This document shows positions 2,689 to 63,174 of a stretch of DNA of 64,000 nt, piece after piece. Made by a program: the position numbers and the translations under genes. Position 1 is the stretch's first letter, and every line of letters starts with the position of its first letter. The stretch spans positions 75,563,534 through 75,627,533 of the forward strand of contig NC_068982.1 of the NCBI RefSeq assembly GCF_001194135.2, read 5' to 3'. Source of the stretch: Octopus bimaculoides. Taxonomy: Eukaryota. Below the pieces are notes generated by a model. It searched no databases and was not told the DNA's origin. It saw only the letters and a list, made by a program, of their open reading frames with translations.

Positions 2689-2732
<44 letters not shown>

Positions 2733-2856
2733 AAAAGGTGGGTGAAATAGAATAGAGTTGGTGGAGCAGGATAGAATAATTCAGGGAGATGAAGAGAAAG
2801 TACAGTGAAAGTGAGAGAGGGAGAATAAGAGATAATGGGGTTTCATAAGATATAAC

Positions 2857-2905
<49 letters not shown>

Positions 2906-15200: not shown

Positions 15201-18200
15201 GAGGTCTGTCATGAACTCTAAGATTCATGAATTTGGAGTTCAGTCACATATACACCAAAGAAACTATGGCTTATATGTAACTGAGATTACAATATTCCCC
15301 ATTAAACAAGATGCCAGTTTGTTGTGGGGTTAACCTCCTGGCAATTCCTGGAACTCATTTACAGCTGAGTGGACTGGAGCAATGTAAGATGAAATGTTTT
15401 TGCTCAAGAACACAACACATTACCAGGTTCGTGAATTGAGGCCATGCTCTTATGATTATGAGTGTAATAACCTAACCACTAGGCCATACACTTTCATAAA
15501 AGGAAAACAACATCTAAGATAAAACAATCATTTCTGGCAAATTGTACCAGAAGAAAATATATCTTGCCTTTCAACTTACTTTTATTCTTTCTTTGTGCAG
15601 ACGTTCAATTTTCTTCATTTCATTCTTTTCAGAATTAAACTTCTCTGAGTTACGTTCAGTGTCCTTTAATAAAGTAGTACAACAGTCAGTAGAAATTACA
15701 TGTCTGCAATTGTTGTTTTCAAAAAATTAGTGAATATTAACTAAACCATATACAACTGTCTGAATTCCTAAGACAACCTTGGAAAGACTATGGGTACTGC
15801 CCATCCTCCAAAAGTCAAATTTTAAAATAAGCAAAACAATGAATACACAGAGTACTATAAAACCACTGACAGACAAATATAAAAGGAGACAAAACAAAAA
15901 GAAATGATTACGATGGCTTAGAATCTATGAGACTCACCTCAATTTGCCTTGTTAGTTGTCTGCACTTTCTGTCCAGTCTTTGCTTCTCGAGGGTTTCCAG
16001 TTCTAGCTTCTGTTCAAGTTCCTAAATACAGTAAATAATGACAGTATAATTAAAATTAGGCATCCAAATATGTGTTGTGTAACCGTTGTTGTTTGTTCCT
16101 ACAGAGAACCCAATGGTAGGCATCAACACAGCACCAGACTACAGAACTATACTATAGTGTTACAGTACTAAAGAAATATAGTGCATTCACATAGATAACA
16201 GGGGACTATGCATATGTTAAAAATAAATGTTTAGAAATCCATAAAAACAATGAGTAATAGCTGAACAAAAAGACAGAACACACATATATCAACTCTAATA
16301 TTTATTTAAATAATACTGTTCACAGTTACTGTGAATACTTTAAATAACCAGCAAAACTGCAAAGTAACTGCCAACACCATTTTATATATGTTTCAAGGCA
16401 CCAATGGGTGCTTTTTTTAATGCAGATTGTCTAAAGCAAGAGTTTTTCCCAACAGCCAGCAATAGTGAATATGGCCTTTATACCAGTCAAATATCTCTCA
16501 AATATACTTCAACTGGTCGATTGGGTTAGCAAGAAAGTAATTTTGTTTTTTTAGTATGAAATAAATTTTTTTTCATACAAAGAATGAACTTAAATCAATT
16601 ATAGTTTTTTTTTTTTGTTTGATGACCTTTTGCCATCTTTCTGGCAACTTTATGATTCTGTGCTCATAGAACTTCTGGTTCTCATCAGCCAAAAACTGAA
16701 GCAAGTGCGATTTCAGGTCATCATCATTATTGAAAGTTTTACCATTCAAAGAATTTTGCAAACTTCGAAATAAATGGTAATCTGACGGTGCAAGGTCAGG
16801 GCTATATGGTGGAGGTGACATCACTTCTCAACCAAGCTCCAATAATTTTTCACGAGTTAGCAAAGACGTGTGTGGTCTAGCATTGTCATGGTGGAACACG
16901 ATTTCTTTATGATTTGCCAATTCTGGCCGTTTTTCTTTGATTGCTTCCTCCAGTTTCATTAGTCATTGACAGTAAACATCTGAATGGATTGCTTTTTCCT
17001 TGGAAGCAGCTCAAAATACACAACACCTTTGTAATCTCACCAAATTGACAGCATCATCTTTTCTTGATACAATTCAGATTTTTGATGTGGTTTGTGCTGG
17101 TTCATTATACTTGGACCATGATAATTTTCGATTGATGTTATTGTAGACAATCCATTTTTCATCACAAGTGATGATTCGTTTAAAAAGGTTGATTTCATTG
17201 CATCTCAAATGCATATCACCAATATTGATTCATTGTGAACCTCTTTCAATTTATGTGGAACCCAAATATTGAGCTTCTTAATGAGTCCAAGACATTTTAA
17301 GTGATTTCCAATTGTCGTGTGTGATACATTTAACCCCTCTGCTATCTCTCGCACAGTTATATGACAATCAAATTCAATTGTGGCTTTGATTCAGTCATCA
17401 TCAACTTCAGTATGTTGACCAAAATGATGGTCATCTTTGAGTGAAAAATCTACAGAATGGAATTTTTAAAACCATATCTGACATGTGCATTAAGCAACCA
17501 ACAGCATAAACTTCACATATCTCTTTGTGAGCCCCAGCAGCTTTCTTGCCTTTATGGAAATAAAAAAGCAAAATATAGTGAAAATGTTCGTTTTTGCACT
17601 CCATGTTAAAATTGACACTGAGCTAACACCTGTAAACAAAATTATGTGCAATTTGCTTCTAAAGAAAGCTGAAAGTAATGGCTATGAAATGTCAAAGCAA
17701 AAAAGTAACATTGACAAAAGCCATTCCAAAAAAATCCTAACTATTTGCAAAAAACGAAATTACTTTCTTGCCAACCCAATATATAGTTAATGAGAAACTA
17801 CAAAATTATATTATGAGAAACTACAAAATGGTGAAGCTACTACTACCACCACCACCACCACTACAGATTATCAACAAATATTTTGGATAAAAAAATGAAA
17901 AGAATATGATTAAGTTGAAAATGGAAACAAATCAACTGAAACATTTTAAAACAGCAAGAATGTAAAAGTCGAGGAGGGGTGAGTAAAGAAATATTAAAAA
18001 TAAAATGAAATTACCTTATTTTTATAGAAGAAGTAAGCAAAAAAAAGAAGTAACCCAAAGCCATTAGGTTAATTAGAAAAGCTACTAAAATACATGTATA
18101 GATTATTTTGATTTTAAAGCTTTGACAAAAGAAATAGATAGAAATATTTTATTACAGAGAAATGGTTCAACAAAGAGCAAGTGAATAATAATGGTAGCTT

Positions 18201-39107: not shown

Positions 39108-39145
<38 letters not shown>

Positions 39146-48100: not shown

Positions 48101-51100
48101 ATAGTTTTTTTTTTATATATACTTAAAATATATATAAATAGTCAAACATTAATTGAAGGCTCAATATAGTAAATATTTAGTGAATAACTTCATGCTTATT
48201 TTTACAAGGAAATGGTTAAGACTGACTTTAATGTTTCGCCAGTTATTGACTTATATATAAATTTTACGTGCAATATATGGATTCATGGAATCTAGTGGTA
48301 ATCACAGAAAAGCTCCTCTAGTGGACCTGGCTACATACCACATAGCAATCCAATGGAGAAGTGTAATGTGGAGTCAATGTAGCCAAAATCTAGTAGATCC
48401 AATCGATGAAATTATTTTATGAGGAGTATATAGAACATAAAAAGTCAGAAGGTATGAGAAATGAATATATTTCACCAGTTGATATCCGTAGGATGATGGC
48501 CATCTGGCAGTCTTCATCATGTAATAATAATTCTTATTTTAGTGCATAAGTTTAAACAGAAGTTAAAATAACCACCTTGATGGATAGAAAATATCCAATG
48601 AATTACTGGTTTGTTACTTACTATTTTGTTGTGAATAGTAATATTCCTAAAGTAATAAGGTTTAATTATAAAACTTTGTTTATAAATATTCAAACTAAAA
48701 TCCAGAAAATAGTGAAGTAGCATTAATATATTTTATTAACTGCAAAAATTCAACATGTTCCCTTACAGCTGTTTCGATATTGCCCAAATGAATTAAATTC
48801 CAGTAATTAAAACATTTTTTGGGGCAAAATCTTGTCAGAGGAGTAAAAAAAGTAAGAAAGACATATCGTTAGGTTATTAACATGTTATTCTTCTAAAACA
48901 CAACAGAGATGTATAATAAATTATTTTACATGTCTGCACTAATATGCATGTTATACATTGCATAGTGCTATTGCACATTTACAAATTGATGCAGATATAG
49001 AAGGCTAGCTCTTCAGATCAACAGAACATTCTGGTTACATCAATTTTTCAATGAGTCTAACAGTTCCACCAATCTACCACTTTGGATTGCTACTTTTCAA
49101 TTGAACCCCAAAAGACTGTAAGGTGAAGTTATCTCAGTGGAATTTGTACTCAGAATCAGAACAAATGCTGTGAAACATTCTATCCAACACTAACCACTGT
49201 GCCAATTAGCTCAGTGCCAACACCAAGATCAAACTCACTGAGCTTGCTCTAGAGATGAATAACTTGTAGTGAGGCTTTGGCCAGCCCCTTGAAAGAACAG
49301 AATACCCACATAAATGTTTGCTGGTCAATCAGCACTGGTTGGCATGTTTAAAGGAAGGTTATGTAAGCTTCCCACCAACTTGCAATTTAAAGGTACTGGA
49401 AGGTTTTGCTCTGGGTTAAATAAATTGATTATTTGAACTCTGTGCCAGATTCAACTTGAATTTCAGACAGAGCAATGTCACTTTGTTCCAAGACATGTGC
49501 TCTAACCTCTTTCTCCTTATATAATCCTCAAAGGAGATGTGTTCAACAAAATTTAATTTACTCTGGTGTTTGATGTCGGCATATATCTATCTATCTATCT
49601 ATCCACTTACCTGCTCTATTTTCTCTTATTTCTATAATAATGTAAGGTACTTGCAACATAAATTTAATGAGATCATTCTCTATATCTTCCATGTTATAAA
49701 TCTTCCTATATTACCTATAGACATACAGATATATTCTTCAACATGATATAAATACACTTTTGTAAAGATATACGATATAAACAGCTAAATATCATAAATA
49801 CATATTTATTTGTTTATATGGTCATTCTTGCCTGTAAATGCAGCCTCATACCTAATTGCTTATTGCCGATGATATAATAATGACTCACAAATTGTTAGCA
49901 TTGGTACAGTCTTTATATAGTTTGAACACCATCTTGCGCAATTAAATGACAATCTTAACTAGTAAAATTGATCTCATGACCATAGTTCGGTAACATTATT
50001 ATCCCTGTATTTAAATTCAAACCCTCACCAAAAACAATGAAATTGGCATGAAAGATATCGAAGCTTTATCAACAAAACCCATGGCATGATACCCTCTTTC
50101 TTGTTCACCTCTTGGAACAATTTTTTTTTATCTTACCTTTATCTTATCAGTAAAACGTTGTTCTTTGTTTTCCAGTGTTTTTTTGCTACTTTCTACACTT
50201 TCTAACTGATTTTCCAAATTCTGAAAGAGAAGAAATATTTGGAATTGTCAGGTACTACAACAGTAATCAGCACCACTACTACCAACATCATCATTATCAA
50301 ATGAAAGAAAATATATTCGAGTAGGAAGTAGCAAGTATCACCACCATTGCTCCCACCACCCATGTTCCTCTTCCTGTAAGTTAGAGGATTTGAACAAAGC
50401 TCAGCTCCTACCTGAACTAATTTTACATTTCATTCTTTTGTAACCAGTGAACTAATTTTGTTTAACTGACTACATTCTCACCCTAGTAGAGAAAAGCCTA
50501 AAACTGAGTCAAGAAACCTCAAAATCAAAAAAGCTGTTTCGAAACAAAATGTATGCATATTTGTCTTTGGCCAGTTTACATCAGCAGAAGATGGAAACAC
50601 TGCTGAGAAATCTAAAACAAAAATAGTTCTTTCAAAATGAAATCCCTTCCATTAGGTTAGACACTTCCTTACTTAGAGATAGGTGAAGGTTTGTGACAGG
50701 AAGGCCATTCAGCAGTAGAATATCTGCCTCAACAAATTTTATTTGACCCATGCAAAAATGGAAAAGTGGACATTAAAATGATGATGATGATGATATCAGT
50801 TGCATAGTGCCTGAGCTCTGAACTGAAAGCCTTGCATTTAGTAAGCTAAGATCAGCATGTAAATTTATTTTCTTAAATTTACATAGAAAAGGGAAGAGCA
50901 AACCTACAATTAACAATAGAGGTGGTTGTTGTATACTATTAAAAAAAAAATGAATAAAAATGTCCTATTTATTAAGTCACTCCTGTATCTTATAGAGGAA
51001 AGAAAGAGACAACAGTCAATTTTGTCAACACAACACAATATACAGGTATGGTTTAGAAGTTTGCTTCACAAACATGTGGTTTCAGGTTCAGTCTCATTCT

Positions 51101-54100
51101 ATGGCACCTTGGACAAGTGTCTTCTACAGTTCCAAGCCGATCAAAGCTTTATGAGCAGATTTGATACAGAGAAACTCTGTGGAAGCTTCTTATATATCAT
51201 TGTATGTATGTGTGCGCATGTTCCCCACTCCCAATCACTTGACAACCAGTGTTGATTTGTTTACACCCAACACCTACAAAAACATTTGCATTTTGGCAAA
51301 ACGAAACTAAGAGAAAGATACTACACATCAAATAAGTAGAGGGGTTGATTTGTTTAACTAAACCTTTTAAGATGGTGCTCCAGCATGGCCACAGTTCAAC
51401 AACTGAAACAGTAAATAAATAAAAGAATTTCTATATCTATCAACTCCAATAGAATGACAGGAACAGCTGGTCCCAGTAGAACAGAATATGTTACCTGTAA
51501 CAATGCACTACTGAATGAGTATCTAGGTCAGATCCCATATGTAAACCCAAAATAACTTAGGCAGCTTTACAGAAATACCTGGAACATAGGAACATCACAG
51601 TACATCTAACCTGATGTTGTGGATGACTATTTTTTTAAGCATGTGTGTGTATATATATGTGCATGCACTATCACAAGTGTGAGAAGTATTATTAATAAGA
51701 TATAGTTGTGGCCCTTCCATGAGGTTATTGACAATTCCTGGATATGGAAATGTATTGATAGGCTTCTCAATCCTTTAAAAAAAAAAACCCAAAAAACACA
51801 CACCACAGTTCTAAAGGAGACTGAGAAACCATCCTCCAGATGATAGGTATATAAATACATAGAAACAGCAGTCTCAATTATATCAGAATCAGTAGGTTTT
51901 ATGAATAGAGGTAGCAGGATTCATACAAAACTGGATAGACTCTACAAGATAACATTACCAGGCATGAAGGAAGAACGAAGCGTACAGAACTCTAACAAAT
52001 ACACAAATAACAAACCATTTTAACTTCCCACACAAATAACAAAAAATACAATAAAGTAGCAACATTGGCACTATGAAACAAGTCTGGTGATGCAATGAAA
52101 TTTCAAACAGTAACAATAGCAGCACAAACTTCAACAGTAAAACTTGGAGGAAATGTTACATTGGCAAAGATGATGATGATAATGATGGTGGTGAAGGTGG
52201 TAGTGGTGATGATAGGGTGGTAGCATTGTTGATAATGATGGTGGTGTGTTGGTAACAGTGGTGATGGAGGAGGTAGTAATGGTAGAGGTGAGCATTAGAA
52301 ATTAACAAACACTGAATAAAATAGCTACTGTGAAACAGCAACGACATTATCTAACAACATCCTTTGGAATAACTATAATGAGAGGCAAATACATTTGGGA
52401 CCGTTCAACAGAGGATTCAATACCTTTGTATCTTAGTGTTCTGATTTCAAATCATGGTATCAGCTTCAACAATGATTATCATTTCTTTTCATGATTAACA
52501 AAATAAATACCAATAAATACAGATATTAATTAATCATGTGGCCCAGTGATTAGGGTGTTGAGCTTATAAAACTAAAGTTGCAGGGTTCTATTCTTGAATC
52601 AGGCGGTGCACTGAATCCTTAAACAAGGTACTTCTTTTCATGTGGCTTCAATCAACCCAGCTGAAAATGATCACTAGTCTTGTACTGGTGCAGCCCTCTC
52701 TCCTTCATTAGCTGTCACATCCTCAGTGTGCCATGAGTAAGAGGTCCAAAAAGGCATTTATGACTGCTCACAAATACATAGCTACCAAAAACAATTAGTA
52801 AAAGCATGCTGCCTGATTCAAGAATAGAACCCTGCAACTTTAGTTTTATAAGCTCAACACTCTAATCACTAGGCCACATGATTAATTAATTAATCTCTGT
52901 ATTTATTGGTATTTATTTTGTTAATCATGAAAAGAAATGATAATCATTGTTGAAGCTGATACCACGATTTGAACTCAGAACACTAAGATATTAAGGTATT
53001 GAATCCTCTGTTGAACGGTCCCAAATGTATTTGCCTCTCATTATAGTTATTCCAAAGGATGTTTTTAAATAATGTCTTTGCTGTTTCACAGTAGCTATTT
53101 TATTCAGTGTTTCCTACTCACTTGCAAATGAAAGTTATAGTATAATAATGCCATGTATAGCATTTAAATATGCTTGTATCTCCAAATCAAGTTTGTATTG
53201 AGATAGAAAAATTTTTTTTATTATTAATGAGGGTAGCAAAAGGTGTTTGGAAGGGGGCAGAGTTTATGAAATTTATGTAAAAGAATTTCTAAGATGCAGT
53301 GAAATTAACTTAGATGAACTGAAATCCTGTTGCCACTATATAATTTTCAAACTAAAAGGTTTTGGTTAAAACATCAAAGTGCTAGCAAATAGTTATACTA
53401 CTACTTCACAATTATAGGTGCATGTATGGCTGTGTGGTTAAGAAGCTTGCTTTCCAGCCGTAGCCCTAGGCCAACTAATGCCTTGCGTGAGAGAATCTGG
53501 TAGATGGTCAGTGTGTGAAAGCCTGTCATGTGTGTGTGTGTGTTCCCCACCCACTGCTTGAGAAATGGTGTTGGTTTGTTTATATCCCTGTAACCAAACA
53601 GCTTGGCAGAAGATGCTGATAGAATAAGTATCAGACTATATAAAAAAAATAAGTACTGGAGCTAATTTGTTCAACTAAACTCTTCAAGGCAGTGCCCTAG
53701 CCTGGCCCATGACTGAATAAGTAAAAAATAACTGAGTGTTGATATAAAGACATAAAATCTACACTTTCACATAATTATTCACATAATTATAGGAAATTTG
53801 ATTTAAATTTTGAAACCCTTTGATAATAGTAATGTCTACAATATTCATAATACTTACTTTTATTTTATCAATGAGCTGCTGTTCTTTACTTTCCACCATT
53901 TTCCGACCAGCATTGGCATGATCCAACTCAGTTCCTAAAGTCTGCAATAGGAAATAAAATATTTTCTGGTTTATTAAAAACTAATATAAAATTGTAAGTT
54001 TGTTAGTTAATTGTATTACCATTTCTCACTCTATTCTAATTTTTCTGCTAACAGTAAAATCCAATATCAAACATCAGTGAAGATAAACATTTACTTTACA

Positions 54101-55026
54101 TTTCCTTGGTCTATGATAGTCAAGACTACATTCAGAAAAGAGCAATTCTTATAATTTACAATGAATGTGTCCCACCCACATTTCACAAGAAAATTTCTCA
54201 CACACATTACCACAACAAACCAAATTATGTCTCTACATCTCTTCCTCACATTTCTGTTTCATACACTATGCTTACCTCCCACTCCCCAATCTTGTCCTCT
54301 TGGCCCTGAGCCACTGTATCATTGCTCTCCACTAGCCCCCGACTTGTGTGTCCCACCTACATGCCCTGTCTTGCTGTATTATCACTATCTGCTAGCCCCT
54401 GACCTGTGTTTCACCCACATGTAACAAGAAAACTTTTGACTCATCCTACTCTAACAAACCAATCTACATCATATCTCTTCTCGTCCTCACATTTCCTCAG
54501 TCTCACTTCAGTAATATTATTACTATAGGAGGAGATGATGAGGCTGATGTCAACATTAAAATCAGGTATGCAGCAGCAGTGTTCAGAGAAATGAACAAAA
54601 TCTGGGTCAGCACCTCAATCAGCAACAGTATTGGCAGATGCCCATGAAATTATTAACCATCTTACTAACAATGACTCTGAGCACCTTTTCAAATTCCACC
54701 TGTCTAACACCCGTGGACATGTTTACAAAGTCAGAAAACAGCACAACTCCTATGAATTTCGGAAACACTTTTTCACACTAAGAGTTGTTGAAGTATGGAA
54801 CAAACTGCCGGCATCAGTTGTTAGTTGTCGGAGCACTGCATCCTTCAAAACTTCCATGCTTCCTGAGATTCGCCAACACTACACCTGATTTTCTCCCCGC
54901 CATACACACGCAAGCATGTATCTGATTCATACACTGTTCACTTTCAAGACATTTGTACAATACTGCATATGCTTTATGCGCAATTTTGAGAAGTTGTAGT
55001 ACACCTGAGCACTGTATACAATAATT

Positions 55027-55060
<34 letters not shown>

Positions 55061-58000
55061 CATTATCATCTAAGCCACATGCTGATTGGTCAAATTACAG
55101 TTTGTAAGATTCAACCTGGTGGAGCCCATCGGAGGGTATTTAAAGGATAAATCTGACCATTTCGCTACAGTTGTCAATTGTGGAACACAACTGTTACTAC
55201 ATAAACTTGATGATTGCATAATGCATGAAAGTACTAGGTTATTTCAATACTGTAAAATTGTAAAAATTGCAAATAATAAAACATGAAAATCAAACTAAGT
55301 TGGAATTTCATTGATTCATATATATATATATATATACACACACACATTCATGTATATTACGAATGTGTATATACACATGCACATACACACACCCACACAT
55401 ATATATACACATATACATACATATATACACACATATACATACACACATTATATATATATATAGATATATGTAAGTATATATGTACTTGTGTGTGTGTATC
55501 TACCATCATATCAACATCCACTTTTCCATACTTGCATGGGTTTTATTGAAGCAGATTTTCTACAGCGGGCCCTTTCTGTTGCCAACCCTCATGTGTTTCC
55601 ATGAAAATATTTCCTCATGACCAAGAATGCACTCACAGAATACTGGAAATGAATGACACTGGTTGTATGACAGTGACAATCATTTACAGATGCCATACAA
55701 TTGGATTCTGTCAGTTTCTCTCTACCAAATTCACCCACAAGGTTTTGGTCAGTCCAGGGCTTTAACAAGACATTTACCCAAGTTGACACACTGTGTGTGT
55801 GTGTGTGTATGTGCATGCAATTTTTGTGTGTTTTGTCTTGATATTGTGAATGTTATTCACTTCTAATATTCTGTGAAAACATTTGATCATGGAGAAATAT
55901 CACCTTGCTCAGAAACAGGTACAGATTGGTGACAGAAAGGGTATTAATAAACTCTGTGGTTCATGTAAGCATGGAAAAGTGGCAGTTAAACAAGGATATC
56001 CATTAGGTAAATTAATGAATTATATAGCTGTTTGAAACAAACCTTTAAATAATCATGCTTTTAAGCTACACTATGCTGCTCTCATACAATTCTTTACAGT
56101 ATGTCAGAGAGTACAGTATGTGTGTCAGTTAGGTGGAGACATAGTGTCATTGGAAGGAAGGCACTATGAACTGTACCTCATTATCTAGCCAGCCAAATGT
56201 GTGCCATAGGACTGCTTGATCAGAGTCAAGCTACACTTTACTAATACATATTAGGTAGTGTATATATGATACAAGCACATTTTATATAGGTTTGAGAGGT
56301 CATAGATTTCCAGTTTCTCAGTAAAAGCTTGCTTACCTTTAGTTCTTCTAGAAGTCGTTGTTCCTTGCTCTCCAGTAACTTATTGTCCACATTTTCTTGG
56401 TCTAACTGATTCTCTAGTTCCTGTGAAACAGAAATAACATTTAATCCCACATAAACAACATCAAAAAGATATTGGGGGCGTAGTCTGCGTGGATAACATT
56501 TACTCTATCTCTATATAATAATTGTTCCTAATTTTGGTACAAGGCCAGGGATTTTGAGGGGATGGGGTAAGTTGATTACATCAACCTCAGTATTTAAGTG
56601 GTGCTTTATCAATACTGAAAGGATGACAGGCAAAGAATAACTTGGTGGAATCTGAACCCAGAACATAAAGAGCCAGAAGAAATGCCCCTAAGCATTTTAT
56701 CCAAACCAGTAACAACTCAGCCAGCTCATTTCTTTATATCTCTTCATAATAATAGCTGATATATATGTTAGTTGGTTGATTGTTTTCCAGTCATGCCTTA
56801 CATCATTATAAAGAGACGGGGAAAGCGTAAAAAGAGATACGGAGAGAGTTAACATAAGAGGTGGATGATTAGTGCACAGACTAGATTTGGTGTGCGCAAA
56901 AGAAAGGGAGAGGGAGTGTAACTTCTGTTTGGAACCCCACCACCTTTCTGAAAGATATACAAATTTTTATAATGAAACTTTGCAAAGATCGGTTTTTGAT
57001 GGAGTAAATTGCAATTATGTTGATAAAATTTAGAAAAATATTAACATACTTATTGCAAGCATATATTTATACAAACAGAAAATTTGTTTCATTTAATTTA
57101 ATTTTATGGCAATAAATATTTTTCTTTTAAAACTTAGTATTCATTTCATTATTTTGTATAAGCAATAAGAAATTTGATAAAAGTTAAATTATAATTATTG
57201 TATGTATGCCATATTTCCAGATACTAGCCACTGTGACAAAAATATACTTCCAAATTTACCCGTTAAATGATGGTTAACACTCTAGTATGCCACATAAACA
57301 CTACATTTGATGACATAAAAGATGCATGGGCATATTAAACACACCCCAATTTCAGTAATACATAATGCAGGAAAGTTAACTTTTCAGTGCATTAAAGTCA
57401 AAGGAGACCCAACTTTGCATACTAGAACTGAGGTGATTTGAGACATCGGTTTTTTTCGGGGGGAGGGGGGGATCTTATATCCCATCGGGTGCAATAACCT
57501 GCAGCTTGTACATTGAGGTGCAGGCATAACTGCAGAGTTAGAGTTGAGTTCATTTTGTTACCATGAAGTCTCAAGTTCTATTTGACAGTGTGGCACCTTG
57601 GGCAAATGTCTTCTGTTGGAACCTCAAGCTGACCAATGCCTTGTAAGTGGACTTTGTAGAAGCCAGCAATGGAAACTCATCATATGTGTGTGTATATTTA
57701 TATCTTAGCATACCCATGTCATCAAAAATACTGACTGTTTTGTTAATGATAGAAAATAGCACATCAAAACAATGGGAGAAACCCTTGATAAATGTCAGTG
57801 ATTGAATAAATATATGCATATACACAAAGGTGAAGTATTTGAACAATTAAATACGGTTGTAATGTCTCAGTTGAAAATATTATCACCCATGTAATATTTT
57901 ATGAAACATCTGCTTTTCTATACTTGCATGGATCAGACAAATTTTGTGTAATTAGATGCCATTCTTGTTGCCAACCCTCACCTGTTTCCAAGTAAGGCCA

Positions 58001-58388
58001 TATTTCACCATGCCCAAATGTGATTACATTGAGGACTGGAAATGAAGAACACCTCTTGCATGATGGAGACACTTGCTTACAACTACTGCCAAATGTCAAG
58101 GCAAGGAGACAGTAAAACAAGTGCGTGCACACACACACACGAGTTGATTGTTGGTGTAACCATTATGTTCTGGTGGTCTCATAAGCTAGCTTTTCTTCAT
58201 CTCCATTGATTTATGAATATACAATTGTATAGTATAATGCCAAGCATACATATTAATGCAAACATGTAAGCATATCTTTCACATTGAAATTAATACTACA
58301 TGAAGAATTTTACAAAATGATCATAATCCTAAGGATGTCAAGTGGTTAAATATATATTCACTTCTCAAACCTCCTGATTTTTATGGTT

Positions 58389-58422
<34 letters not shown>

Positions 58423-61400
58423 NNNNNNNNNNNNNNNNNNNNNNNNNNNNNNNNNNNNNNNNNNNNNNNNNNNNNNNNNNNNNNNNNNNNNNNNNNNNNN
58501 NNNNNNNNNNNNNNNNNNNNNNTATATATATATATATATATATACATACATGGTGGGTTTCTTTCAGTCTCTGTCCACCAAATCTATTCACAAGGGTTTG
58601 AAATGACTCCAGTACTTATTGTTAAGCCAGGTACTTATTCTATAAGTTTTTTTAGTTGAACCACTAAGTTATAGGCATGTAAACAAACCAAGTGGTGGTG
58701 AGGGACAAACATACACAAAGATGCACATATACACAAGACAGACTTCTTTCAGTTTTTGTCTACGAAATTCACTCACAAGGCTTCGGCTGACCTGGGGTTA
58801 TAATGTAGTCAAGTAGCAAACTTTTTAACACACAGCCATATACACAAACACACACAGACATGCATATGTACATTGATGCATGTGCATACATATACGTGTG
58901 TGTTATCTTTTACTTGGAAATAAGGGTTAGAAACATGGGGGAAAAAATGAAAGATTGTGTGTGTGTATAAATGCTACATGAATGATATTTTGAAAACAAA
59001 ACAGTAATATTTAATTTCATACATGTGTGTGAAATTGGTGAAGTAATTATTATTTGATAAATATTTACACAGTAACTTCAGAATAAAACCTCTCATTACA
59101 CTTTGCTTGCATTTAGTGTCTCTGACTATCACTCACTTCCACTCCGTTTCTTGTTTTAGTTTTCCTCTGACAGAATGAATGGTAGGACACACATTGCATT
59201 TTATTATATGTAAGAGGTGTGTGTGTGTTTACCCTTTGCATTTTCACACCACAGCACTAGGAAATGTAAAGGATATCTTATTCTGAATGTTTTGAATGGT
59301 ACAAAACCAGGAGATGATTTGTTGGCAAGAGAAATGACAAAAGCATCTGTTTTGTAGTTCAGGATTTAGAAGAAGTGCAAATGCAATCCAATACACAGAT
59401 ACACACACAGCGAATGAAGGCACATCATGCTAGCCACGTGCTATTCATTACAGCATGTCACAACATACAGTATAATTGTTAGCTAGGTGGAGGCATAGTG
59501 CAATAAGGAAGAGGCCACTCTGAGCGTGTAAACACACACACAAGTAACTGGCTTATTTCAGTTTCTGTCAACTAAATCAACTTGTAAAATTTGTTTGGCC
59601 TAGAGCTATAGCAGAAGGCACTTGTCCAAGGTGCCATGCAGTTGGACTGAACCTGAAACCACTTGGTTGGGAAACAAACTTCTTAACCATACAACTGTGT
59701 GAGTGTGTGTGTGTGTGTGTCTGTGTGCATGCGTGTACGTGCATGCCTGTGTGTATGTGTGTGTGTGTGTGTGTGTGTNNNNNNNNNNNNNNNNNNNNNN
59801 NNNNNNNNNNNNNNNNNNNNNNNNNNNNNNNNNNNNNNNNNNNNNNNNNNNNNNNNNNNNNNNNNNNNNNNNNNNNNNNNNNNNNNNNNNNNNNNNNNNN
59901 NNNNNNNNNNNNNNNNNNNNNNNNNNNNNNNNNNNNNNNNNNNNNNNNNNNNNNNNNNNNNNNNNNNNNNNNNNNNNNNNNNNNNNNNNNNNNNNNNNNN
60001 NNNNNNNNNNNNNNNNNNNNNNNNNNNNNNNNNNNNNNNNNNNNNNNNNNNNNNNNNNNNNNNNNNNNNNNNNNNNNNNNNNNNNNNNNNNNNNNNNNNN
60101 NNNNNNNTGTGTGTGTGTGTGTAATGTTAGCAAGTCTTATCAAAAACAATTTCCCAGAATATGACAGTTTCCATTCAGATACCTGACCTTTAGCACATTT
60201 ACAAAATTGAATGTAGCTGATTGTTCAATGCATGAATATATGATTGGTCAAATGGCAAACACAAACTTAACATATAGCATTGAATAAGGGAGAAGGTCAA
60301 AACCTTCAGCCTTATGGCTTCTATATTTCTACTAGTTTACATTGGTCTTTTGTCTCTTCATGAATGAACTCAGTAATCTTGGTGATAAAAATAATTAAAC
60401 ACTCACCTTAATCTTTGTCAGAAGCCGCTGTTCATTGTTTGCTTTCAGATTCTCCTTATCATCAAGAATGTTTTCCAGCTCCTAAGGTTTTAAGACAACA
60501 GAGCGAAAGTAAAAAAAAGTTATTCATTATACTGTCTTCCTGTATCTATGTACATACACACAGACATGGCAGTGTAGTCAAGGAGCTTGCTTCTCAACCA
60601 TGTGATCTCTGGTTTAATCCCATAGTATGGTACATTACACAAGTATCTTCTACTATAGCTCTGGGTTGACCAAAACCTTGTGAGTGTGTGCATTTCCTTC
60701 ACATGACATAGCATGATAGTTGTAAATGAGCATCACTGCAGCATCTCTTTCCAACCTGCTATGCAAACATTCCAGGCAATGAGGCAATTCTATCTTGTTT
60801 GGAAACAGGTGAGAGTTGGCAAAAGAAAGAGCATCCAGCAGTAGACAATGTGTCTGCCTCAATGAATGCTGCCTAACCCTTACAAACAAGGCAAAGTGGA
60901 TATTAAATGATGATGATCACACACATACACTTCCATACAGAGGTCATGGTGGTAGTAAGCTGATGAAAATGAGATAACATTTTATGCCTCTCCAGTAACT
61001 TCAATTTTATTCCAGAATGAATCCGAAAACAAATGAATATTTTCCCTTGATTCATCATAGGTAAAAGTCTAATAAAAGTAATTAAAAATTAGTTGACATG
61101 TAAATCTAAGAAGATAAGTCATTATCATTAATTGGGAGGTGTTTGACCATCACTTCAACATTGGTAAGATGACCATCAAGAAAATAAAGTAAAGATGCCT
61201 GTAAGTTTTCATGTCTTTTGTCTTGGGAGTTTCTCTATTTTTTCCCATGCTAGCATGGTTTAGACCAGCACATTAGTAGATTTCAAAGTGGGTGCAACCA
61301 TGCTTGGGACAATGAGATGATTTGGTATGGATGACTGGAAATGCAGTCTGTTGTGGTGACTACTTTTTGGAGTTAACCACACATACACACAGAAATATAC

Positions 61401-63174
61401 ATATAGATAGAGAGAAAGTTGCAATTTATTAATAGAACATGATTGACACTCTCCTACACATAAAGATAAATATGCTCACACACAAACAGAGATAGGTAGA
61501 TGGATGGATGGATGGACAGAGAGAATAAGGGAAACATTAAAATGTCTGATGCCAAATAAGTGGCACCAAAATGGTTGTACCAAAATGCCTTGTATCACCT
61601 ACCACCCAAAGGGTTGTGAGAATTATTTTCTATGGGGGAACAGAGTTGCATTTGAAATCTGAGTGATAGATGCAGTTTTTAACTGCCTTAATTTTCAAAA
61701 AGAATAGTTTTCATTTTTATTCTGTGCAAAATGCTTTGACATTCCATATTATATTGATGAAATGACTAATGTACATGTAGTCTTTTAATGGTTATCAACC
61801 TGCCAGCAGCTATTTATTGTGGGATACTTGATTTCATTGAATGGTAGCAAGGGTGTATTGAAAAAGAAAGATAGGGGTGATAGTTCAAAAATTTTTGCAG
61901 CATTGGCTTAAATGAATATTGTTCAAGTATATTTTTACAGCTGCAAGATCTTCCTGTTCTAATCCTTATCTGTTTTTTTTTTCTTTTTTGCTTTGTTTTG
62001 CAAATAAAAGAATTTTCATTCCCCTCATTTTCAAAAGTGTGGAACCAGATTGACTTGTTGATAACACTGCCCATAGTTGAGTGATTTTTTTTTGTGTTAG
62101 AGCAGGATATAAACATTCACATACATTCTAACTAACAAATTCACTCACAAAGCATTGGTCAACTCAAGGCTGTAGTAGAAGATACTTGCATAAGATACCT
62201 GTAGTGGGACCAAACACAAAACCACATGGTTGATAAGCAAACTTCTTAACCACATAGCTGTGTGTGTGTGCACATGCACAAAGAAAACATAACATTTTTT
62301 CTTTTTCAGTGAAACTGAACCTGAAACCATATGGTTATGAAAGCAAATTCAACAAATTATATTCTATTTGCCTGCTTCAACCTACTCTACTTTCAGTGAC
62401 AACACTACAGCTAAATAGACTCAGGCAGTCAGGAGAATAGAATATATGGTGCCATGGAAGAAATGACAACAATACAAGGACAAATGGAAAAACTAAACAA
62501 GATTCCTTAGAAAAGGTTTAGTTTTGAAAAGAGGTAATTATGGAATAAAAACTATGGTATCTCTTGTGAGAGTATCATCTGAATAAAAATAAAAGAAGGC
62601 AAAGTTTGGTAATTGACCTTGATTTTTCGTAAATGTTGTTTTTCTCGTTCATATGACAATTCCTTCTCGTTACTCTGCTTTTCTAATTGCTTTCTCAGTT
62701 CCTGAAAAAATGACAATTGCAACTAATAGTTATAAAAAATTTCATTACTTTCCAGCAAAAATTAAAATAACAACAGTTTCTAATTTTAGCACAAGGCCAG
62801 CAATTTTGAGGGGATGGCAAGTTGATACTGTAACAACATTAATAATGATTTCAAATTTTGGCACAGGGGCAGCAATTTTAGTGAGAAGATATTAGACAAT
62901 TACATCAACTCTAATGCGTGACTAGTACTTATTTTATCACTTCTGCGAGGATGAAAAGCAATGCCAATCTCTGAAGAATTTTAACTAAGAATATAAAGAG
63001 TCAGAGGATATGTCATTACATTTTGTCCAATTCATTAATGACTGTCAGCAGGCTGCCTTTGTTTCAAATTTTGACACAAGCAAATCCATCAACAGAATTA
63101 ACTCTTACCTCAATTTTATTTTCAAGTTCTAATGTAACCGATTCCTCTTCTCTTGTAATTTTGTCAGTCACTGC
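1639..63174 (-). CDS. Multi-exon gene (partial at both ends) encoding a long myosin-tail-like coiled-coil protein with a probable C-terminal transmembrane anchor
   Basis: 18 exons, all flanked by AG/GT on the minus strand with concordant phases. They join into 1869 nt (623 codons) without a stop. The rod is E/K/Q/L-rich with heptad periodicity. Confidence 0.88.
1944..2085 (-). CDS. Exon, 142 nt, phase 0/1: [47 protein letters not shown]; Ser-rich linker
   Basis: Acceptor gtattttag|TTG, in frame with the upstream exon. Donor GCAG|gtgtgg was chosen because it restores phase with 1639-1805; the 3' boundary is less certain. Confidence 0.68.
2128..2400. repeat. Compound (TG)/(TA)/(CA) microsatellite
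   Basis: Directly visible; source of the spurious YIYI ORFs. A similar array is at 55315-55500. Confidence 0.95.
2680..3170 (+). repeat. About 490-bp purine-rich low-complexity tract with (GA)n arrays
   Basis: Almost only G/A on the plus strand; source of the spurious SLSL ORFs. Confidence 0.9.
3313..3543 (-). CDS. Exon, 231 nt, phase 0/0: [77 protein letters not shown]
   Basis: Acceptor ctttctttgtgcag|TCT, donor TCG|gtaagt. Matches ORF 3250..3549; coiled-coil composition. Confidence 0.93.
7101..7256 (-). CDS. Exon, 156 nt, phase 0/0: [52 protein letters not shown]
   Basis: Acceptor ggcatttttag|CAA, donor CAG|gtaatt, open frame. Confidence 0.92.
8418..8550 (-). CDS. Exon, 133 nt, phase 2/0: [44 protein letters not shown]
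   Basis: Acceptor atttttcag|C, donor AAG|gtgtga. The first base completes an AAC codon with the 11480-11538 exon. Confidence 0.92.
11480..11538 (-). CDS. Exon, 59 nt, phase 0/2: [19 protein letters not shown](N); non-coiled-coil Ser/Arg linker
   Basis: Acceptor ttttataacag|GTC, donor AA|gtaagc. Supplies the phase-2 end needed by the 8418-8550 exon. Confidence 0.85.
12295..12795. other. Assembly gap (N run) between (CT)n and (TA)n
   Basis: 501 N. Confidence 1.
12954..13260. repeat. Imperfect inverted repeat: arms about 12954-13086 and 13133-13260, 46-nt loop
   Basis: Shared blocks such as TCAAGATGTTATTAAATCAT, GCATTCAAAATACATC and TGATCAGCAATGCAT; roughly 80-85% identity by eye. Confidence 0.9.
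15270..15490 (-). mobile_element. SINE with a Meta-like core (representative copy)
   Basis: On the minus strand: GTGTTCTTGAGCAAAAACATTTCATCTTACATTGCTCCAGTCCACTCAGCTGTAAATGAG. Related copies at about 33830-33960 (-) and 52535-52680 (+). The domain name is inferred from memory. Confidence 0.6.
15938..16021 (-). CDS. 84-nt repeat exon: [28 protein letters not shown]
   Basis: Acceptor gtatttag|GAA, donor GAG|gtgagt; phase 0/0. Confidence 0.92.
16521..17779 (-). mobile_element. Full-length decayed mariner (DD34D), mellifera-subfamily-like
   Basis: TIRs TTGGGTTAGCAAGAAAGTAATT / AATTACTTTCTTGCCAACCCAA, with TA on the right flank. Transposase N-terminus [23 protein letters not shown] starts at 17604; C-terminal [22 protein letters not shown] is in ORF 16573..16824. 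The frame is broken. Confidence 0.93.
18386..18815 (+). mobile_element. Two head-to-tail copies of a SINE with a Nin/Deu-like central domain
   Basis: Heads GAGCTGGCAGAATC at about 18390 and 18600, core GACTTTGCCTTTCATCCTTTC...GATAAA.TAAGTAC, and an ATT tail. Other copies are at 70-292 and 338-540 (-), 5890-6090 (+), 56520-56740 (-) and 62770-63060 (-). Confidence 0.8.
25621..25992 (+). mobile_element. tRNA-headed SINE, tail type B (representative copy)
   Basis: Head GGTGTGACTGTGTGGTTAAGAAGCTTGC...GGTTCAGTCCCACTG (A/B-box-like), then (TG)n, then a tail ending CAGTCCAATGACTGAAAGAAATAAAAG. Similar copies at 29370, 36158, 51040 and 53420. Confidence 0.8.
30827..30910 (-). CDS. 84-nt repeat exon: [28 protein letters not shown]
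   Basis: Acceptor tttctcacag|AAC, donor ATG|gtgagt; phase 0/0. Confidence 0.92.
33240..33640 (+). mobile_element. RTE-clade LINE post-RT fragment
   Basis: [18 protein letters not shown]...RLKFIGHSW...AEVLLWQP, read across frameshifts. Confidence 0.7.
35420..35655 (+). mobile_element. RTE LINE RT fragment
   Basis: [15 protein letters not shown]...[14 protein letters not shown]...LKVNLAK, read across a frameshift. A similar short piece ([15 protein letters not shown]) is on the minus strand near 9510-9570. Confidence 0.7.
35658..36035 (+). mobile_element. tRNA-headed SINE, tail type A (representative copy)
   Basis: Same head as type B, then (TG)n, then a tail CTTGGAAACAGGTGAG...GCATC.GGCCATAGAAAATC...GGAAAAGTGGATGTTAAAATGATG. 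Similar copies at 27806, 43250 and 60565. Confidence 0.8.
37870..39111 (-). mobile_element. Full-length decayed mariner (DD34D) with frameshifted transposase
   Basis: TIRs TTAGGTCATCCCATAAATAAT / ATTATTTATGGGATGACCCAA, with TA on both flanks. Three ORF fragments: [22 protein letters not shown]...[13 protein letters not shown], and HQNNARPH...[13 protein letters not shown]. Confidence 0.95.
39146..39780 (-). mobile_element. 3' half of a maT/mori-like (DD37D-type) Tc1/mariner element
   Basis: Motifs WQQDSASGH and [16 protein letters not shown] (ORF 39388..39708). The terminus TA|CAGGGTATTC is at 39144-39155; no second TIR was found. The subfamily call rests on motif memory. Confidence 0.8.
40336..40410 (-). 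CDS. 75-nt shortened repeat exon: [25 protein letters not shown]
   Basis: Acceptor tttattttag|GAT, donor AAA|gtattt; phase 0/0; ends in the repeat motif EKIK. Confidence 0.88.
41573..41656 (-). CDS. 84-nt repeat exon: [28 protein letters not shown]
   Basis: Acceptor ttgtattttag|GGT, donor AAA|gtaagt; phase 0/0. Confidence 0.92.
44290..45290 (+). mobile_element. RTE-clade LINE reverse transcriptase remnant
   Basis: Degenerate RT: [25 protein letters not shown]...[24 protein letters not shown]; many stops and frameshifts. Confidence 0.8.
45534..45617 (-). CDS. 84-nt repeat exon: [28 protein letters not shown]
   Basis: Acceptor ttgtttctatag|CAA, donor CGG|gtacgt; phase 0/0. Confidence 0.92.
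46026..46109 (-). CDS. 84-nt repeat exon: [28 protein letters not shown]
   Basis: Acceptor atttttgtag|TCT, donor AAG|gtaaag; phase 0/0. Confidence 0.92.
46390..46850 (-). mobile_element. 3' end of an RTE LINE (ORF C-terminus plus 3' UTR)
   Basis: [15 protein letters not shown]...WHHAVLKK, followed by the same 3' UTR sequence that occurs as many short copies (e.g. 25224-25580, 8925-9100, 42935-43100). Confidence 0.7.
47936..48019 (-). CDS. 84-nt repeat exon: [28 protein letters not shown]
   Basis: Acceptor ttcttttacag|GCA, donor AAG|gtaaat; phase 0/0. Confidence 0.92.
50137..50220 (-). CDS. 84-nt repeat exon: [28 protein letters not shown]
   Basis: Acceptor ttctctttcag|AAT, donor AAG|gtaaga; phase 0/0. 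Confidence 0.93.
52307..53112. repeat. Long inverted repeat: arms 52307-52604 and 52811-53112, 206-bp spacer
   Basis: Manual alignment gives 10 substitutions and one 4-nt indel over about 300 bp. Confidence 0.97.
53858..53941 (-). CDS. 84-nt repeat exon: [28 protein letters not shown]
   Basis: Acceptor ttcctattgcag|ACT, donor AAA|gtaagt; lies within ORF 53759..53947. Confidence 0.93.
54525..54630 (+). mobile_element. Short RTE LINE fragment abutting the CR1 copy
   Basis: [32 protein letters not shown] resembles the RTE post-RT motif. Confidence 0.55.
54618..55062 (+). mobile_element. 5'-truncated CR1-clade LINE 3' end with (ATT)n tail
   Basis: ORF 54631..54888 has [10 protein letters not shown]...[18 protein letters not shown]...FK, the typical CR1 ORF2 C-terminus. 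A 3' UTR and a TTA repeat follow at about 55030-55060. Confidence 0.88.
56337..56420 (-). CDS. 84-nt repeat exon: [28 protein letters not shown]
   Basis: Acceptor ctgtttcacag|GAA, donor AAG|gtaagc; lies within ORF 56241..56450. Confidence 0.93.
58423..58522. other. Assembly gap (N run) within (TA)n
   Basis: 100 N. Confidence 1.
59137..59166 (-). CDS. Candidate 30-nt symmetric (cassette) microexon: [10 protein letters not shown]
   Basis: Acceptor cctaccattcattctgtcag|AGG and donor GAA|gtgagt; frame-preserving. Not needed for continuity of the model. Confidence 0.45.
59779..60107. other. Assembly gap (N run) within (TG)n
   Basis: 329 N. Confidence 1.
62618..62701 (-). CDS. 84-nt repeat exon: [28 protein letters not shown]
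   Basis: Acceptor gtcattttttcag|GAA, donor AAG|gtcaat; phase 0/0. Confidence 0.9.
63109..63174 (-). CDS. 66-nt exon, the most 5' one found: [22 protein letters not shown]
   Basis: Acceptor aatattttcag|GCA, donor GAG|gtaaga; phase 0 end. Confidence 0.87.

What the first reader, a model, noticed from the sequence alone, without database searches (positions are those of the whole stretch)
15938..62701. One exon = one 28-residue coiled-coil module: ten exact 84-nt phase-0 exons build a modular rod
Seen: ten exons (62618, 56337, 53858, 50137, 47936, 46026, 45534, 41573, 30827, 15938) are all 84 nt, phase 0/0, and align without gaps. The consensus is xLExQLExExxxKKxxENKExRLxEKIK: aliphatic at positions 6 and 27 in 10/10, K/R at 19 in 10/10, K/R at 13 in 9/10. 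Shared peptides use different synonymous codons (e.g. RKLAENK in 47936 versus 45534), and the introns show no obvious similarity. Known: 28 residues is the myosin II rod repeat, and the non-muscle myosin segment [28 protein letters not shown] fits the same register. Inference: the rod grew by old tandem exon duplication under purifying selection. Because any exon can be skipped without changing frame or heptad register, splicing could set rod length in steps of about 4 nm, like a tunable molecular ruler.
Basis: partly seen in the sequence, partly recalled or inferred. Interest (0 to 1): 0.8.

Follow-up and report, generated by a model that had tools for sequence, protein, structure and literature searches.

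The report
Octopus citron kinase modular coiled-coil exons
The window holds the middle of the octopus citron kinase gene (a cell-division kinase), whose coiled-coil stalk is built in cephalopods from 15 small in-frame exons, each encoding one 28- or 25-residue block; the gene is already annotated, and only two of the blocks are seen to be skipped.

Summary
All ten claimed 84-nt exons are real. Each is an AG|84-nt open frame|GT on the minus strand and matches Octopus bimaculoides RefSeq citron Rho-interacting kinase isoform X1 at 100%.

The list is incomplete. The window holds 13 exons of 84 nt (44107, 34928 and 15580 were missed) and two of 75 nt (60407, 40336). All are phase 0.

Only eight exons (56337 to 41573) form a demonstrable repeat family. 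Exon 62618 is a diverged ninth member. Exons 34928, 30827, 15938 and 15580 cannot be told from generic coiled coil.

The array is not a myosin rod. It lies in the citron kinase stalk, between the kinase domain and the C1/PH/CNH domains.

The eight core modules match one-to-one in a distant cephalopod with the same exon borders. Synonymous sites are saturated and replacement changes are few, so the duplication is old and under purifying selection.

No non-cephalopod citron kinase has the modules. Patella encodes the homologous region in one 1,713-nt exon.

Skipping is seen only for 30827 (RefSeq isoforms plus assembled transcripts of the distant cephalopod) and 15580 (RefSeq models only). The core is present in every one of the full-length models and transcripts I examined, from five species.

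Both N gaps lie in one intron and hide no annotated exon.

The parts
63109..63174 (-). 66-nt phase-0 exon ([22 protein letters not shown]), just upstream of the array
   Evidence: 100% match to P0001 and P0124. AG/GT borders read.
62618..62701 (-). 84-nt exon, module 1. A diverged member of the repeat family.
   Evidence: in RefSeq X1. The octopus copy scores -1.1 bits, but its positional orthologues in the distant cephalopod score 21-22 bits, above all 6,525 control windows.
60407..60481 (-). 75-nt exon (25 residues). Shifts the heptad phase by 3.
   Evidence: Phase shift. Length conserved in Argonauta, the Logan transcript and L001. Family score lies in the top 0.7% of controls.
58423..58522 (.). 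Assembly gap (100 N) inside the intron between exons 60407 and 56337
   Evidence: No model in five cephalopods places an exon here.
59779..60107 (.). Assembly gap (329 N) inside the same intron
56337..56420 (-). Core module 1 of 8 (84 nt)
   Evidence: Leave-one-out E 8e-6. 86% identical to its L001 orthologue.
53858..53941 (-). Core module 2 (84 nt)
50137..50220 (-). Core module 3 (84 nt)
47936..48019 (-). Core module 4 (84 nt)
46026..46109 (-). Core module 5 (84 nt)
   Evidence: Its orthologue P0123 was found independently in 1.84 billion proteins.
45534..45617 (-). Core module 6 (84 nt)
44107..44190 (-). Core module 7 (84 nt).
   Evidence: Found by an HMM built from the other ten (E 1.2e-8). 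Leave-one-out E 9e-9. In RefSeq X1.
41573..41656 (-). Core module 8 (84 nt), the most diverged of the core
   Evidence: Leave-one-out E 0.06. Reciprocal-best with L001 19230-19313.
40336..40410 (-). 75-nt exon (25 residues), the second phase shift.
   Evidence: Family score in the top 1.4-4% of controls.
34928..35011 (-). 84-nt exon ([28 protein letters not shown]) with a GC donor. Not demonstrably a family member.
30827..30910 (-). 84-nt cassette exon. Conserved, but not similar to the core family.
   Evidence: Present in O. bimaculoides X1, X2, X4, X5 and O. sinensis X1, X3, X4. Absent from O. bimaculoides X3, X6, O. sinensis X2 and both O. vulgaris models. Distant-cephalopod transcripts exist with and without its orthologue. 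Family score is like random windows.
15938..16021 (-). 84-nt exon, present in all full-length models; generic coiled coil
15580..15663 (-). A cassette in RefSeq models X4 and X6 only.
13555..13593 (-). 39-nt phase-0 exon ([13 protein letters not shown])
12295..12795 (.). Assembly gap (501 N) in the intron between exons 13555 and 11480
   Evidence: The models join the flanking exons directly.
11480..11538 (-). 59-nt exon (phase 0 to 2), a serine-rich break in the coiled coil
8418..8550 (-). 133-nt exon (phase 2 to 0)
7101..7256 (-). 156-nt phase-0 coiled-coil exon
3313..3543 (-). 231-nt phase-0 coiled-coil exon, the last exon of the gene inside the window

Best explanation
The minus strand encodes residues 809-1450 of Octopus bimaculoides citron Rho-interacting kinase (CIT, the orthologue of Drosophila Sticky). 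This is the middle of the long coiled-coil stalk that separates the N-terminal kinase from the C-terminal C1, PH and CNH domains.

**Shown**
- In cephalopods this stretch is built from a run of small phase-0 exons. In exon order the residues encoded are 28, 25, 28x8, 25, 28, 28, 28, 28.
- Eight adjacent 84-nt exons, plus a diverged ninth (62618), are copies of one 28-residue unit of four heptads. The consensus is xLENQLExESSxKKxLENKExRLxEKIK.
- The duplications predate the split between octopods and a distant cephalopod lineage. Since then every copy has been kept, one-to-one, under purifying selection.
- Each 28-residue exon keeps the heptad phase. The two 25-residue exons that bracket the core each shift it by 3, like a stutter.

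**Inferred**
- The array acts as a rigid, dimeric alpha-helical spacer. Using the standard 0.1485 nm rise per residue, each module adds about 4.2 nm and the whole array about 61 nm.
- This puts more distance between the kinase/CC1 end, which binds midbody microtubule motors in fly and human, and the anillin/Rho/membrane-binding end.
- Length variation by splicing is limited. Inside the window only exons 30827 and 15580 behave as cassettes. The core array is constitutive.
For: **Identity**
- The window exons match RefSeq XP_052834286 at 100%.
- The cluster carries the name citron Rho-interacting kinase in O. bimaculoides, O. sinensis, O. vulgaris and Argonauta.
- O. sinensis X1 has Pkinase 85-349, Pkinase_C 368-410, C1 1880-1929, PH 1960-2072 and CNH 2108-2362.
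- The best non-cephalopod hits are citron kinases from many phyla.

**Repeat family**
- Leave-one-out HMM E-values of 1e-5 to 3e-10.
- Lag-28/56/84 autocorrelation z of 9-16, in cephalopods only.
- A profile search of 1.84 billion proteins found only the cephalopod CIT cluster, one orthologous single-module fragment and one unrelated repeat.

**Age and selection**
- Saturated synonymous sites among paralogues.
- Reciprocal-best one-to-one orthology with L001 at identical exon borders.
- Eight core copies in each of 17 cephalopod proteins and none in about 100 other CITs.

**Coiled coil**
- A strong 3.5-residue hydrophobic period. The heptad phase stays constant through the 28-mers and shifts after each 25-mer.
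- Conserved L/I at positions 2, 6, 16, 23 and 27.

**Splicing**
- The isoform matrix.
- Transcripts of 2,486 and 2,514 aa from a distant cephalopod differ by exactly the 30827-type module. L002 is a contiguous 7.5-kb ORF on an 8.6-kb contig, so it is a spliced mRNA.

**Domain context**
- Sticky CC1, CC2a and CC2b functions are described in PMC6743463.
Against: - No experiment or structure shows that this stretch dimerises.
- Three of the eight core (a/d) positions per module are conserved charged residues: E9, K/R13 and E/D20. A canonical parallel in-register dimer would therefore be weak in the middle of each module.
- The spacer role is inferred from position only. Alignment of coiled-coil regions between phyla is unreliable.
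- RefSeq X isoforms are computational models, and I could not see the reads behind them. Skipping of 15580 rests on those models alone.
- No tissue-resolved RNA data were available, so rare skipping of core exons cannot be excluded.
Confidence: 0.75

Rival explanations
1. Splicing-tunable molecular ruler. Any of the 84-nt exons can be included or skipped, so cells set the stalk length in steps of about 4 nm.
For: - All array exons are phase 0/0, and the 28-residue ones preserve the heptad phase.
- Two 84-nt exons are cassettes: 30827 and 15580.
- Upstream of the window, RefSeq isoforms X2 and X5 drop 25- and 42-residue blocks.
Against: - The eight core modules, and also 62618, 60407, 40336, 34928 and 15938, are present in all 13 full-length annotated models examined, from three Octopus species. 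They are also present in the Argonauta model and in four full-length transcripts of a distant cephalopod.
- The module count is fixed at eight core copies in every cephalopod examined.
- Each core module has kept its own sequence identity across a split deep enough to saturate synonymous sites. That is not expected of interchangeable length units.
- The 75-nt exons would break the heptad register if skipped.
Confidence: 0.12
2. Repeated docking sites or a self-assembly surface. The near-invariant surface residues (E3, E17, N18, K19, E25, K28) and the acidic first half and basic second half of each module make the array a multivalent binding site for a partner. Alternatively they drive staggered side-by-side packing of citron kinase dimers, as charge zones do in myosin rods. 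On this view the array is more than a passive spacer.
For: - Positions outside the hydrophobic core are as conserved as the core, across 24 modules from three lineages.
- Positive charges show a 28-residue period roughly opposite in phase to negative charges (156 versus -16 degrees).
- Each module is under purifying selection.
Against: - The negative-charge period is weak (power 1.1), and the 28/3 period that marks myosin rods is absent.
- No partner is known, and no data on assembly exist.
- Surface conservation can also come from inter-helix salt bridges within a dimer.
Confidence: 0.1
3. Single alpha-helix (SAH) domain. The array would be a stable monomeric charged helix acting as a spring or lever, not a coiled coil.
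For: - The modules are 57-93% E/K/R/D/Q/L/N.
- Three of the eight a/d positions are charged.
Against: - A strong 3.5-residue hydrophobic period (power 4.5 against 0.05 at 3.6).
- Five conserved aliphatic a/d positions per module.
- The flanking stalk is coiled coil in characterised citron kinases (PMC6743463).
Confidence: 0.05

Closest known systems
Citron Rho-interacting kinase (CIT-K; Drosophila Sticky)
   Same: - Same gene family and domain order: kinase, Pkinase_C, long coiled coil, C1, PH, CNH.
- Named as such in RefSeq for four octopod species.
- The array sits in the central coiled coil, which in Sticky is divided into CC1, CC2a and CC2b (PMC6743463).
   Different: - Cephalopod proteins are about 2,430-2,500 aa, against about 2,000-2,070 aa in brachiopod, nemertean, echinoderm and bird CITs.
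- The stretch aligned to the array is 414 aa in cephalopods and about 175-190 aa in those groups.
- No other CIT has the 28-residue module family.
- Lingula has mixed exon sizes in this region, and Patella has one 1,713-nt exon.
Titin PEVK exons (PPAK repeats)
   Same: - Many small in-frame exons, each encoding one repeat of about 28 residues (my own knowledge; PMC7691732 came up in the search for that term, but I did not read it).
- The exons arose by tandem duplication.
- Inclusion or skipping of repeats changes the length of an extended protein segment (PMC6469411).
   Different: - PEVK is disordered and proline-rich, not a coiled coil.
- Its exons are spliced in very many combinations and vary in number between species.
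- Here the count is fixed, and only two of the fifteen array exons are cassettes.
Myosin II rod 28-residue repeat
   Same: - A 28-residue (four-heptad) period in a coiled coil (established knowledge: McLachlan and Karn 1982).
- Positive and negative charges lie roughly half a repeat apart.
   Different: - No sequence relationship: no Myosin_tail Pfam hit.
- The 28/3 charge period is missing.
- To my knowledge the myosin repeat is a charge pattern, not a set of recognisably duplicated units, and it is not encoded one repeat per exon.
Nebulin and collagen exon-repeat genes
   Same: The exon size equals the structural repeat (nebulin modules of about 35 residues; 54-bp collagen exons). They grew by tandem exon duplication, and the exons are in frame (my own knowledge).
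   Different: Different folds and functions. Not tested here.

Membership tests
Citron Rho-interacting kinase (CIT/Sticky) | N-terminal AGC-type (DMPK-family) kinase domain with a Pkinase_C extension | tested here: met
   P0124 (100% identical to the window exons) has Pkinase 85-349 and Pkinase_C 368-410. The closest solved kinase domains are MRCK, ROCK and DMPK. The kinase exons themselves lie outside the window.
Citron Rho-interacting kinase (CIT/Sticky) | Long central coiled coil followed by C1, PH and CNH domains | tested here: met
   The O. sinensis orthologue P0130 has C1 1880-1929, PH 1960-2072 and CNH 2108-2362. In O. bimaculoides RefSeq this half is a separate model, P0135.
Citron Rho-interacting kinase (CIT/Sticky) | Orthology: best matches outside the clade are citron kinases rather than MRCK or ROCK | tested here: met
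   all the top full-length hits that carry an informative source name are citron kinases, from molluscs, brachiopod, nemerteans, echinoderms and vertebrates; among hits to the kinase-bearing model P0001 (844 aa), the best named one is a citron kinase (1e-137), ahead of MRCK (about 1e-109).
Citron Rho-interacting kinase (CIT/Sticky) | Rho-binding homology region in the distal coiled coil; midbody function in cytokinesis | not tested
   I did not locate the RBH motif. It would lie downstream of the window. Function cannot be tested with these tools.
Myosin II rod | Sequence membership in the myosin tail family | tested here: not met
   No PF01576 hit for the array (E up to 1) or for P0124. The protein carries a kinase head, not a myosin motor.
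Myosin II rod | 28-residue charge repeat with a strong 28/3 component | tested here: not met
   Power at period 9.33 is 0.9 for positive and 1.3 for negative charges. At period 28 only the positive charges stand out (4.5).
Tandem exon-duplication repeat arrays with cassette splicing (titin PEVK type) | One symmetric-phase exon per repeat, with the repeats homologous to each other | tested here: met
   Eight core exons plus 62618.
Tandem exon-duplication repeat arrays with cassette splicing (titin PEVK type) | Extensive differential inclusion of the repeat exons | tested here: not met
   None of the homologous core exons is skipped in any full-length model or transcript examined. The two cassettes (30827, 15580) are not demonstrable family members. 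Tissue-level RNA data were not available.
Two-stranded coiled coil | Heptad pattern of hydrophobic a/d residues | tested here: inconclusive
   There is a strong 3.5-residue period and five of the eight a/d positions are aliphatic. Positions 9, 13 and 20 are conserved charged residues. Oligomeric state cannot be tested here.

The most novel reading that the evidence does not exclude
The cephalopod lineage inserted a sub-rod into the citron kinase stalk. It consists of eight, originally nine, copies of a four-heptad exon, bracketed by two conserved 25-residue stutter exons.

On this reading the sub-rod is more than a spacer. Its invariant surface motif (E17-N18-K19-E20) and its half-acidic, half-basic charge pattern would form a periodic docking or self-assembly lattice with a 4.2-nm pitch. 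The conserved 30827 cassette next to it would switch length or binding between cell types.
Probability: 0.1. Interest if true: 0.65.

Novelty: new member of a known kind. Interest (0 to 1): 0.4.

Why it matters
The gene and its isoforms are already in RefSeq, so nothing new is added at the level of annotation.

What I did not find described, in two literature searches, is the exact match between exon and structural unit (one exon = four heptads) in a signalling kinase stalk. Nor did I find its restriction to cephalopods or its strict one-to-one conservation.

It is a clean natural example of a coiled coil lengthened by exon duplication and then frozen. It shows that the central stalk of citron kinase tolerates very different lengths and has been expanded in different ways in different lineages:
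- a 28-residue period in cephalopods;
- a 17-residue period in Haliotis;
- one giant exon in Patella;
- about 87 residues in amphioxus.

It also offers a natural length series for asking whether stalk length matters for midbody organisation.

It does not support a general splicing-set ruler.

Tried and rejected
**Steps that led nowhere**
I did not try to get round this. I used an allowed alignment of exact window translations instead.
- The first word-index search with the concatenated exons found only the truncated 2015 model P0001.
- The look-up of encoding contigs had no record for P0001, P0147 (Pecten) or P0148 (Mizuhopecten).
- An AG/GT exon scan missed exon 34928 because its donor is GC.
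- The accession numbers SRR29271484 and ERZ21867824 appear in no searchable paper. The species behind L001 and L002 is therefore unidentified. I call it a distant cephalopod because it is 62% identical to octopus CIT, against 28-36% for the non-cephalopod CITs listed, and it shares the array.
- Pfam did not recognise the transposase relics. A search of PDB sequences did.

**Ideas rejected**
- *Gene-model artefact.* Rejected by the RefSeq matches and the transcripts.
- *Introns retain the duplication.* The similarities are dispersed repeats.
- *The N gaps hide a module.* No species has one there.

**Not done**
- I ran no structure prediction. The allowed inputs are either over 1,200 aa or single exons, and a monomer model of a coiled coil would not settle the oligomeric state.
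Full report
**1. The observation**

The window is AT-rich (35% G+C) and has three N runs. On the minus strand, each of the ten claimed positions holds an 84-nt stop-free frame-0 segment between AG and GT, with a pyrimidine-rich tract upstream.

A bare AG|84-nt ORF|GT is common: 60 on the minus strand and 52 on the plus strand. With coiled-coil composition added there are 11 on the minus strand and 3 on the plus strand. With a good donor required as well there are 9 and 0. So the enrichment is real, but exon status needed outside evidence.

**2.

An HMM built from the ten modules found an eleventh 84-nt exon at 44107-44190 (E 1.2e-8). Among sequences outside the model, the best weak matches were two 75-nt exons at 60407-60481 and 40336-40410.

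Mapping the RefSeq protein added two more 84-nt exons: 15580-15663, and 34928-35011, which has a GC donor.

In total the window holds 13 exons of 84 nt and 2 of 75 nt. All are phase 0/0. They sit within a run of 17 consecutive phase-0 exons from 63174 down to 13555.

**3. Which exons are really alike**

- In a leave-one-out test, 56337, 53858, 50137, 47936, 46026, 45534 and 44107 are clear homologues (E 1e-5 to 3e-10). Exon 41573 is marginal (0.06). Exons 62618, 30827 and 15938 are not significant.
- I then built a 32-sequence profile from four cephalopod sources and scored it against 6,525 control windows taken from citron kinase coiled coils.
  - The octopus 62618 module scores nothing. Its positional orthologues in a distant cephalopod score 21-22 bits, above every control. 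It is therefore a diverged ninth copy.
  - The two 25-mers are borderline (top 0.7-4% of controls).
  - Exons 34928, 30827, 15938 and 15580 score like random coiled-coil windows.

**4. What the gene is**

- The concatenated exons hit one protein, an 844-aa O. bimaculoides kinase model (P0001). It ends with exons 63109, 62618 and 60407 and then reads into the intron.
- A profile of the modules, searched against 1.84 billion representative proteins, returned three hits:
  - a 2,431-aa protein with ten matched stretches (E 1.7e-83);
  - a 49-aa single-module fragment;
  - an unrelated repeat protein.
- The 2,431-aa protein is O. vulgaris 'citron rho-interacting kinase-like'. Its cluster holds O. 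bimaculoides RefSeq isoforms X1-X6 and O. sinensis isoforms X1-X4.
- The window matches O. bimaculoides X1 at 100% for residues 809-1450.
- O. sinensis X1 has the citron kinase domain order. Its best hits outside cephalopods are citron kinases from many phyla.
- There is no myosin-tail match.

**5. The assembly gaps**

Gaps 58423-58522 and 59779-60107 both lie in the 3,986-nt intron between exons 60407 and 56337. The flanking exons are phase 0/0, so the frame does not depend on the gap lengths.

All O. bimaculoides, O. sinensis, O. vulgaris and Argonauta models, and the transcripts of a distant cephalopod, join these two modules directly. The gap-free orthologous intron in L001 has no module.

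The third gap, 12295-12795, is also intronic.

**6. Age and selection**

- Among the eight core paralogues, identity is 0.59, 0.62 and 0.35 at codon positions 1, 2 and 3. Random expectation is 0.28, 0.38 and 0.30. Synonymous sites are saturated and the protein is conserved.
- Similarities between intron flanks belong to dispersed repeat families scattered over the window in both orientations.
- L001 is a 20-kb genomic piece of an unidentified, more distant cephalopod. It carries the same series (84, 75, 84x8) with AG/GT at the same module borders.
- Each of its eight core modules is the reciprocal best match of the octopus module in the same position (57-86% identity). Synonymous difference is about 0.95 and replacement difference 0.07-0.27.
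- All eight duplications therefore predate that split. There has been no gain, loss or homogenisation since.

**7. Distribution**

- The core profile finds exactly eight copies in every cephalopod citron kinase and none in about 100 others.
- A lag-28 autocorrelation (z 13-16) is seen only in cephalopods. Haliotis shows a 17-residue period and amphioxus a period of about 87 residues.
- The stretch aligned to the array is 414 aa in cephalopods, 283-669 aa in other molluscs and about 175-190 aa in brachiopod, nemertean, starfish and chicken. Coiled-coil alignments are rough, so these are only lengths.
- In Lingula the region has exons of mixed sizes. In Patella it is one 1,713-nt exon.
- The best-scoring control window is chicken CIT 677-710. 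It aligns at the N-terminal edge of the array. This may be the ancestral single copy, but it is only a lead.

**8. Structure**

- Strong hydrophobic residues show a 3.5-residue period.
- The heptad phase is constant through the 28-mers and moves by 3 after each 25-mer. The two 25-residue exons that bracket the core act like stutters, and their lengths are conserved in all the cephalopods examined.
- Within a module, the a/d positions 2, 6, 16, 23 and 27 are aliphatic. Positions 9, 13 and 20 are conserved E, K/R and E/D. The hydrophobic seam therefore runs across each exon junction and the module centre is polar.
- Several surface positions (E3, E17, N18, K19, E25, K28) are nearly invariant.

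**9. Splicing**

The isoform matrix shows the following.
- Exon 30827 is absent from O. bimaculoides X3 and X6, O. sinensis X2 and both O. vulgaris models.
- Exon 15580 is absent from O. bimaculoides X4 and X6.
- Every other array exon is present in all full-length models.
- Upstream of the window, X2 drops a 25-residue block and X5 drops a 42-residue block.

Independent support comes from assembled transcripts of the distant cephalopod. They come in 2,486- and 2,514-aa forms that differ by exactly the orthologue of exon 30827.

The alternative use of 30827 is therefore old and conserved. It is not a member of the repeat family, and the repeat family itself is never seen skipped.

**10. Reading**

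The array is a cephalopod-specific, exon-duplicated extension of the citron kinase stalk. It adds about 61 nm if it is a continuous coiled coil (0.1485 nm per residue, standard value).

In Sticky, the N-terminal part of the coiled coil (CC1) binds midbody microtubule proteins. The distal parts (CC2a, CC2b) receive the anillin and Rho inputs (PMC6743463). By position, the array lies between the N-terminal part of the stalk and its distal part. I did not map the Sticky CC1/CC2 boundaries onto the octopus protein, so this placement is approximate.

A spacer role is the simplest inference. The conserved surface and charge pattern leave room for a docking or assembly role.

The tunable-ruler idea holds only for two peripheral cassettes.

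**11. Novelty**

The gene and its isoforms are annotated already. The exon-equals-four-heptads design and its history did not appear in two full-text searches.

The closest concept is the titin PEVK exon array, where splicing does set length (PMC6469411).

Noticed in passing
window 16576-16962 (-): A relic of a mariner-type transposase, broken by a stop codon, in the intron between exons 30827 and 15938. It matches the Mos1 and SETMAR catalytic domains at E about 4e-25. Pfam did not detect it.
   Followed up: yes
window 63417-63668 (-): A second ORF fragment with a transposase-like motif (PHPPFLPDLASANFHFFPKMK), in the DNA upstream of exon 63109 (no exon lies between it and the window end). 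The resemblance to Tc1/mariner is from memory only. Pfam found nothing.
   Followed up: partly
window 34926-34927 (-), donor of exon 34928-35011: The intron after this exon starts with GC instead of GT (GAG|GCTAGT). It follows a constitutive exon and directly precedes the cassette exon 30827.
   Followed up: partly
window 52307-52604 and 52811-53112: A 302-nt inverted repeat pair, 95% identical, inside the intron between exons 53858 and 50137. Several other SINE-like families recur in both orientations across the introns.
   Followed up: no
outside the window (RefSeq models P0124 and P0135): O. bimaculoides RefSeq splits citron kinase into two genes. X1 ends in an apparent intron read-through (…NTLRYLLLFNF). 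The C-terminal half (XP_052821815) starts with a Pif1-type helicase fragment (Pfam PF21530, E 2e-11). This points to a transposon insertion or an assembly break downstream of this window.
   Followed up: partly
L004 16257-17969 (Patella vulgata CIT gene): The region homologous to the array is one 1,713-nt exon encoding 571 residues, with no 28-residue period.
   Followed up: partly
P0140 (Haliotis rufescens) and P0248 (Branchiostoma) citron kinases: The same stalk region shows other repeat periods: 17 residues in Haliotis (z 10) and about 87 residues in amphioxus (z 9.9). This suggests separate expansions of this part of the stalk in several lineages.
   Followed up: no
P0262 (1,040 aa, Logan transcript of the distant cephalopod): A transcript form with a different N-terminus. 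It joins the protein at SLQTTNTH…, the sequence that in RefSeq X1 directly follows the window's last exon. It therefore lacks the kinase and the whole array. It may come from an internal promoter, loosely like the kinase-less citron-N of mammals (my own knowledge).
   Followed up: no
window about 2620-3160 (+): A purine-rich simple repeat (GA-type) that reads as RERERE/GEGE in several frames. It lies just downstream of exon 3313-3543, on the other strand.
   Followed up: no
P0122 (235 aa, ENA): An unrelated protein with seven tandem copies of CKEQVDNTEQYLRINNI matched the module profile at E 6e-9. It is most likely a composition or repeat artefact.
   Followed up: no
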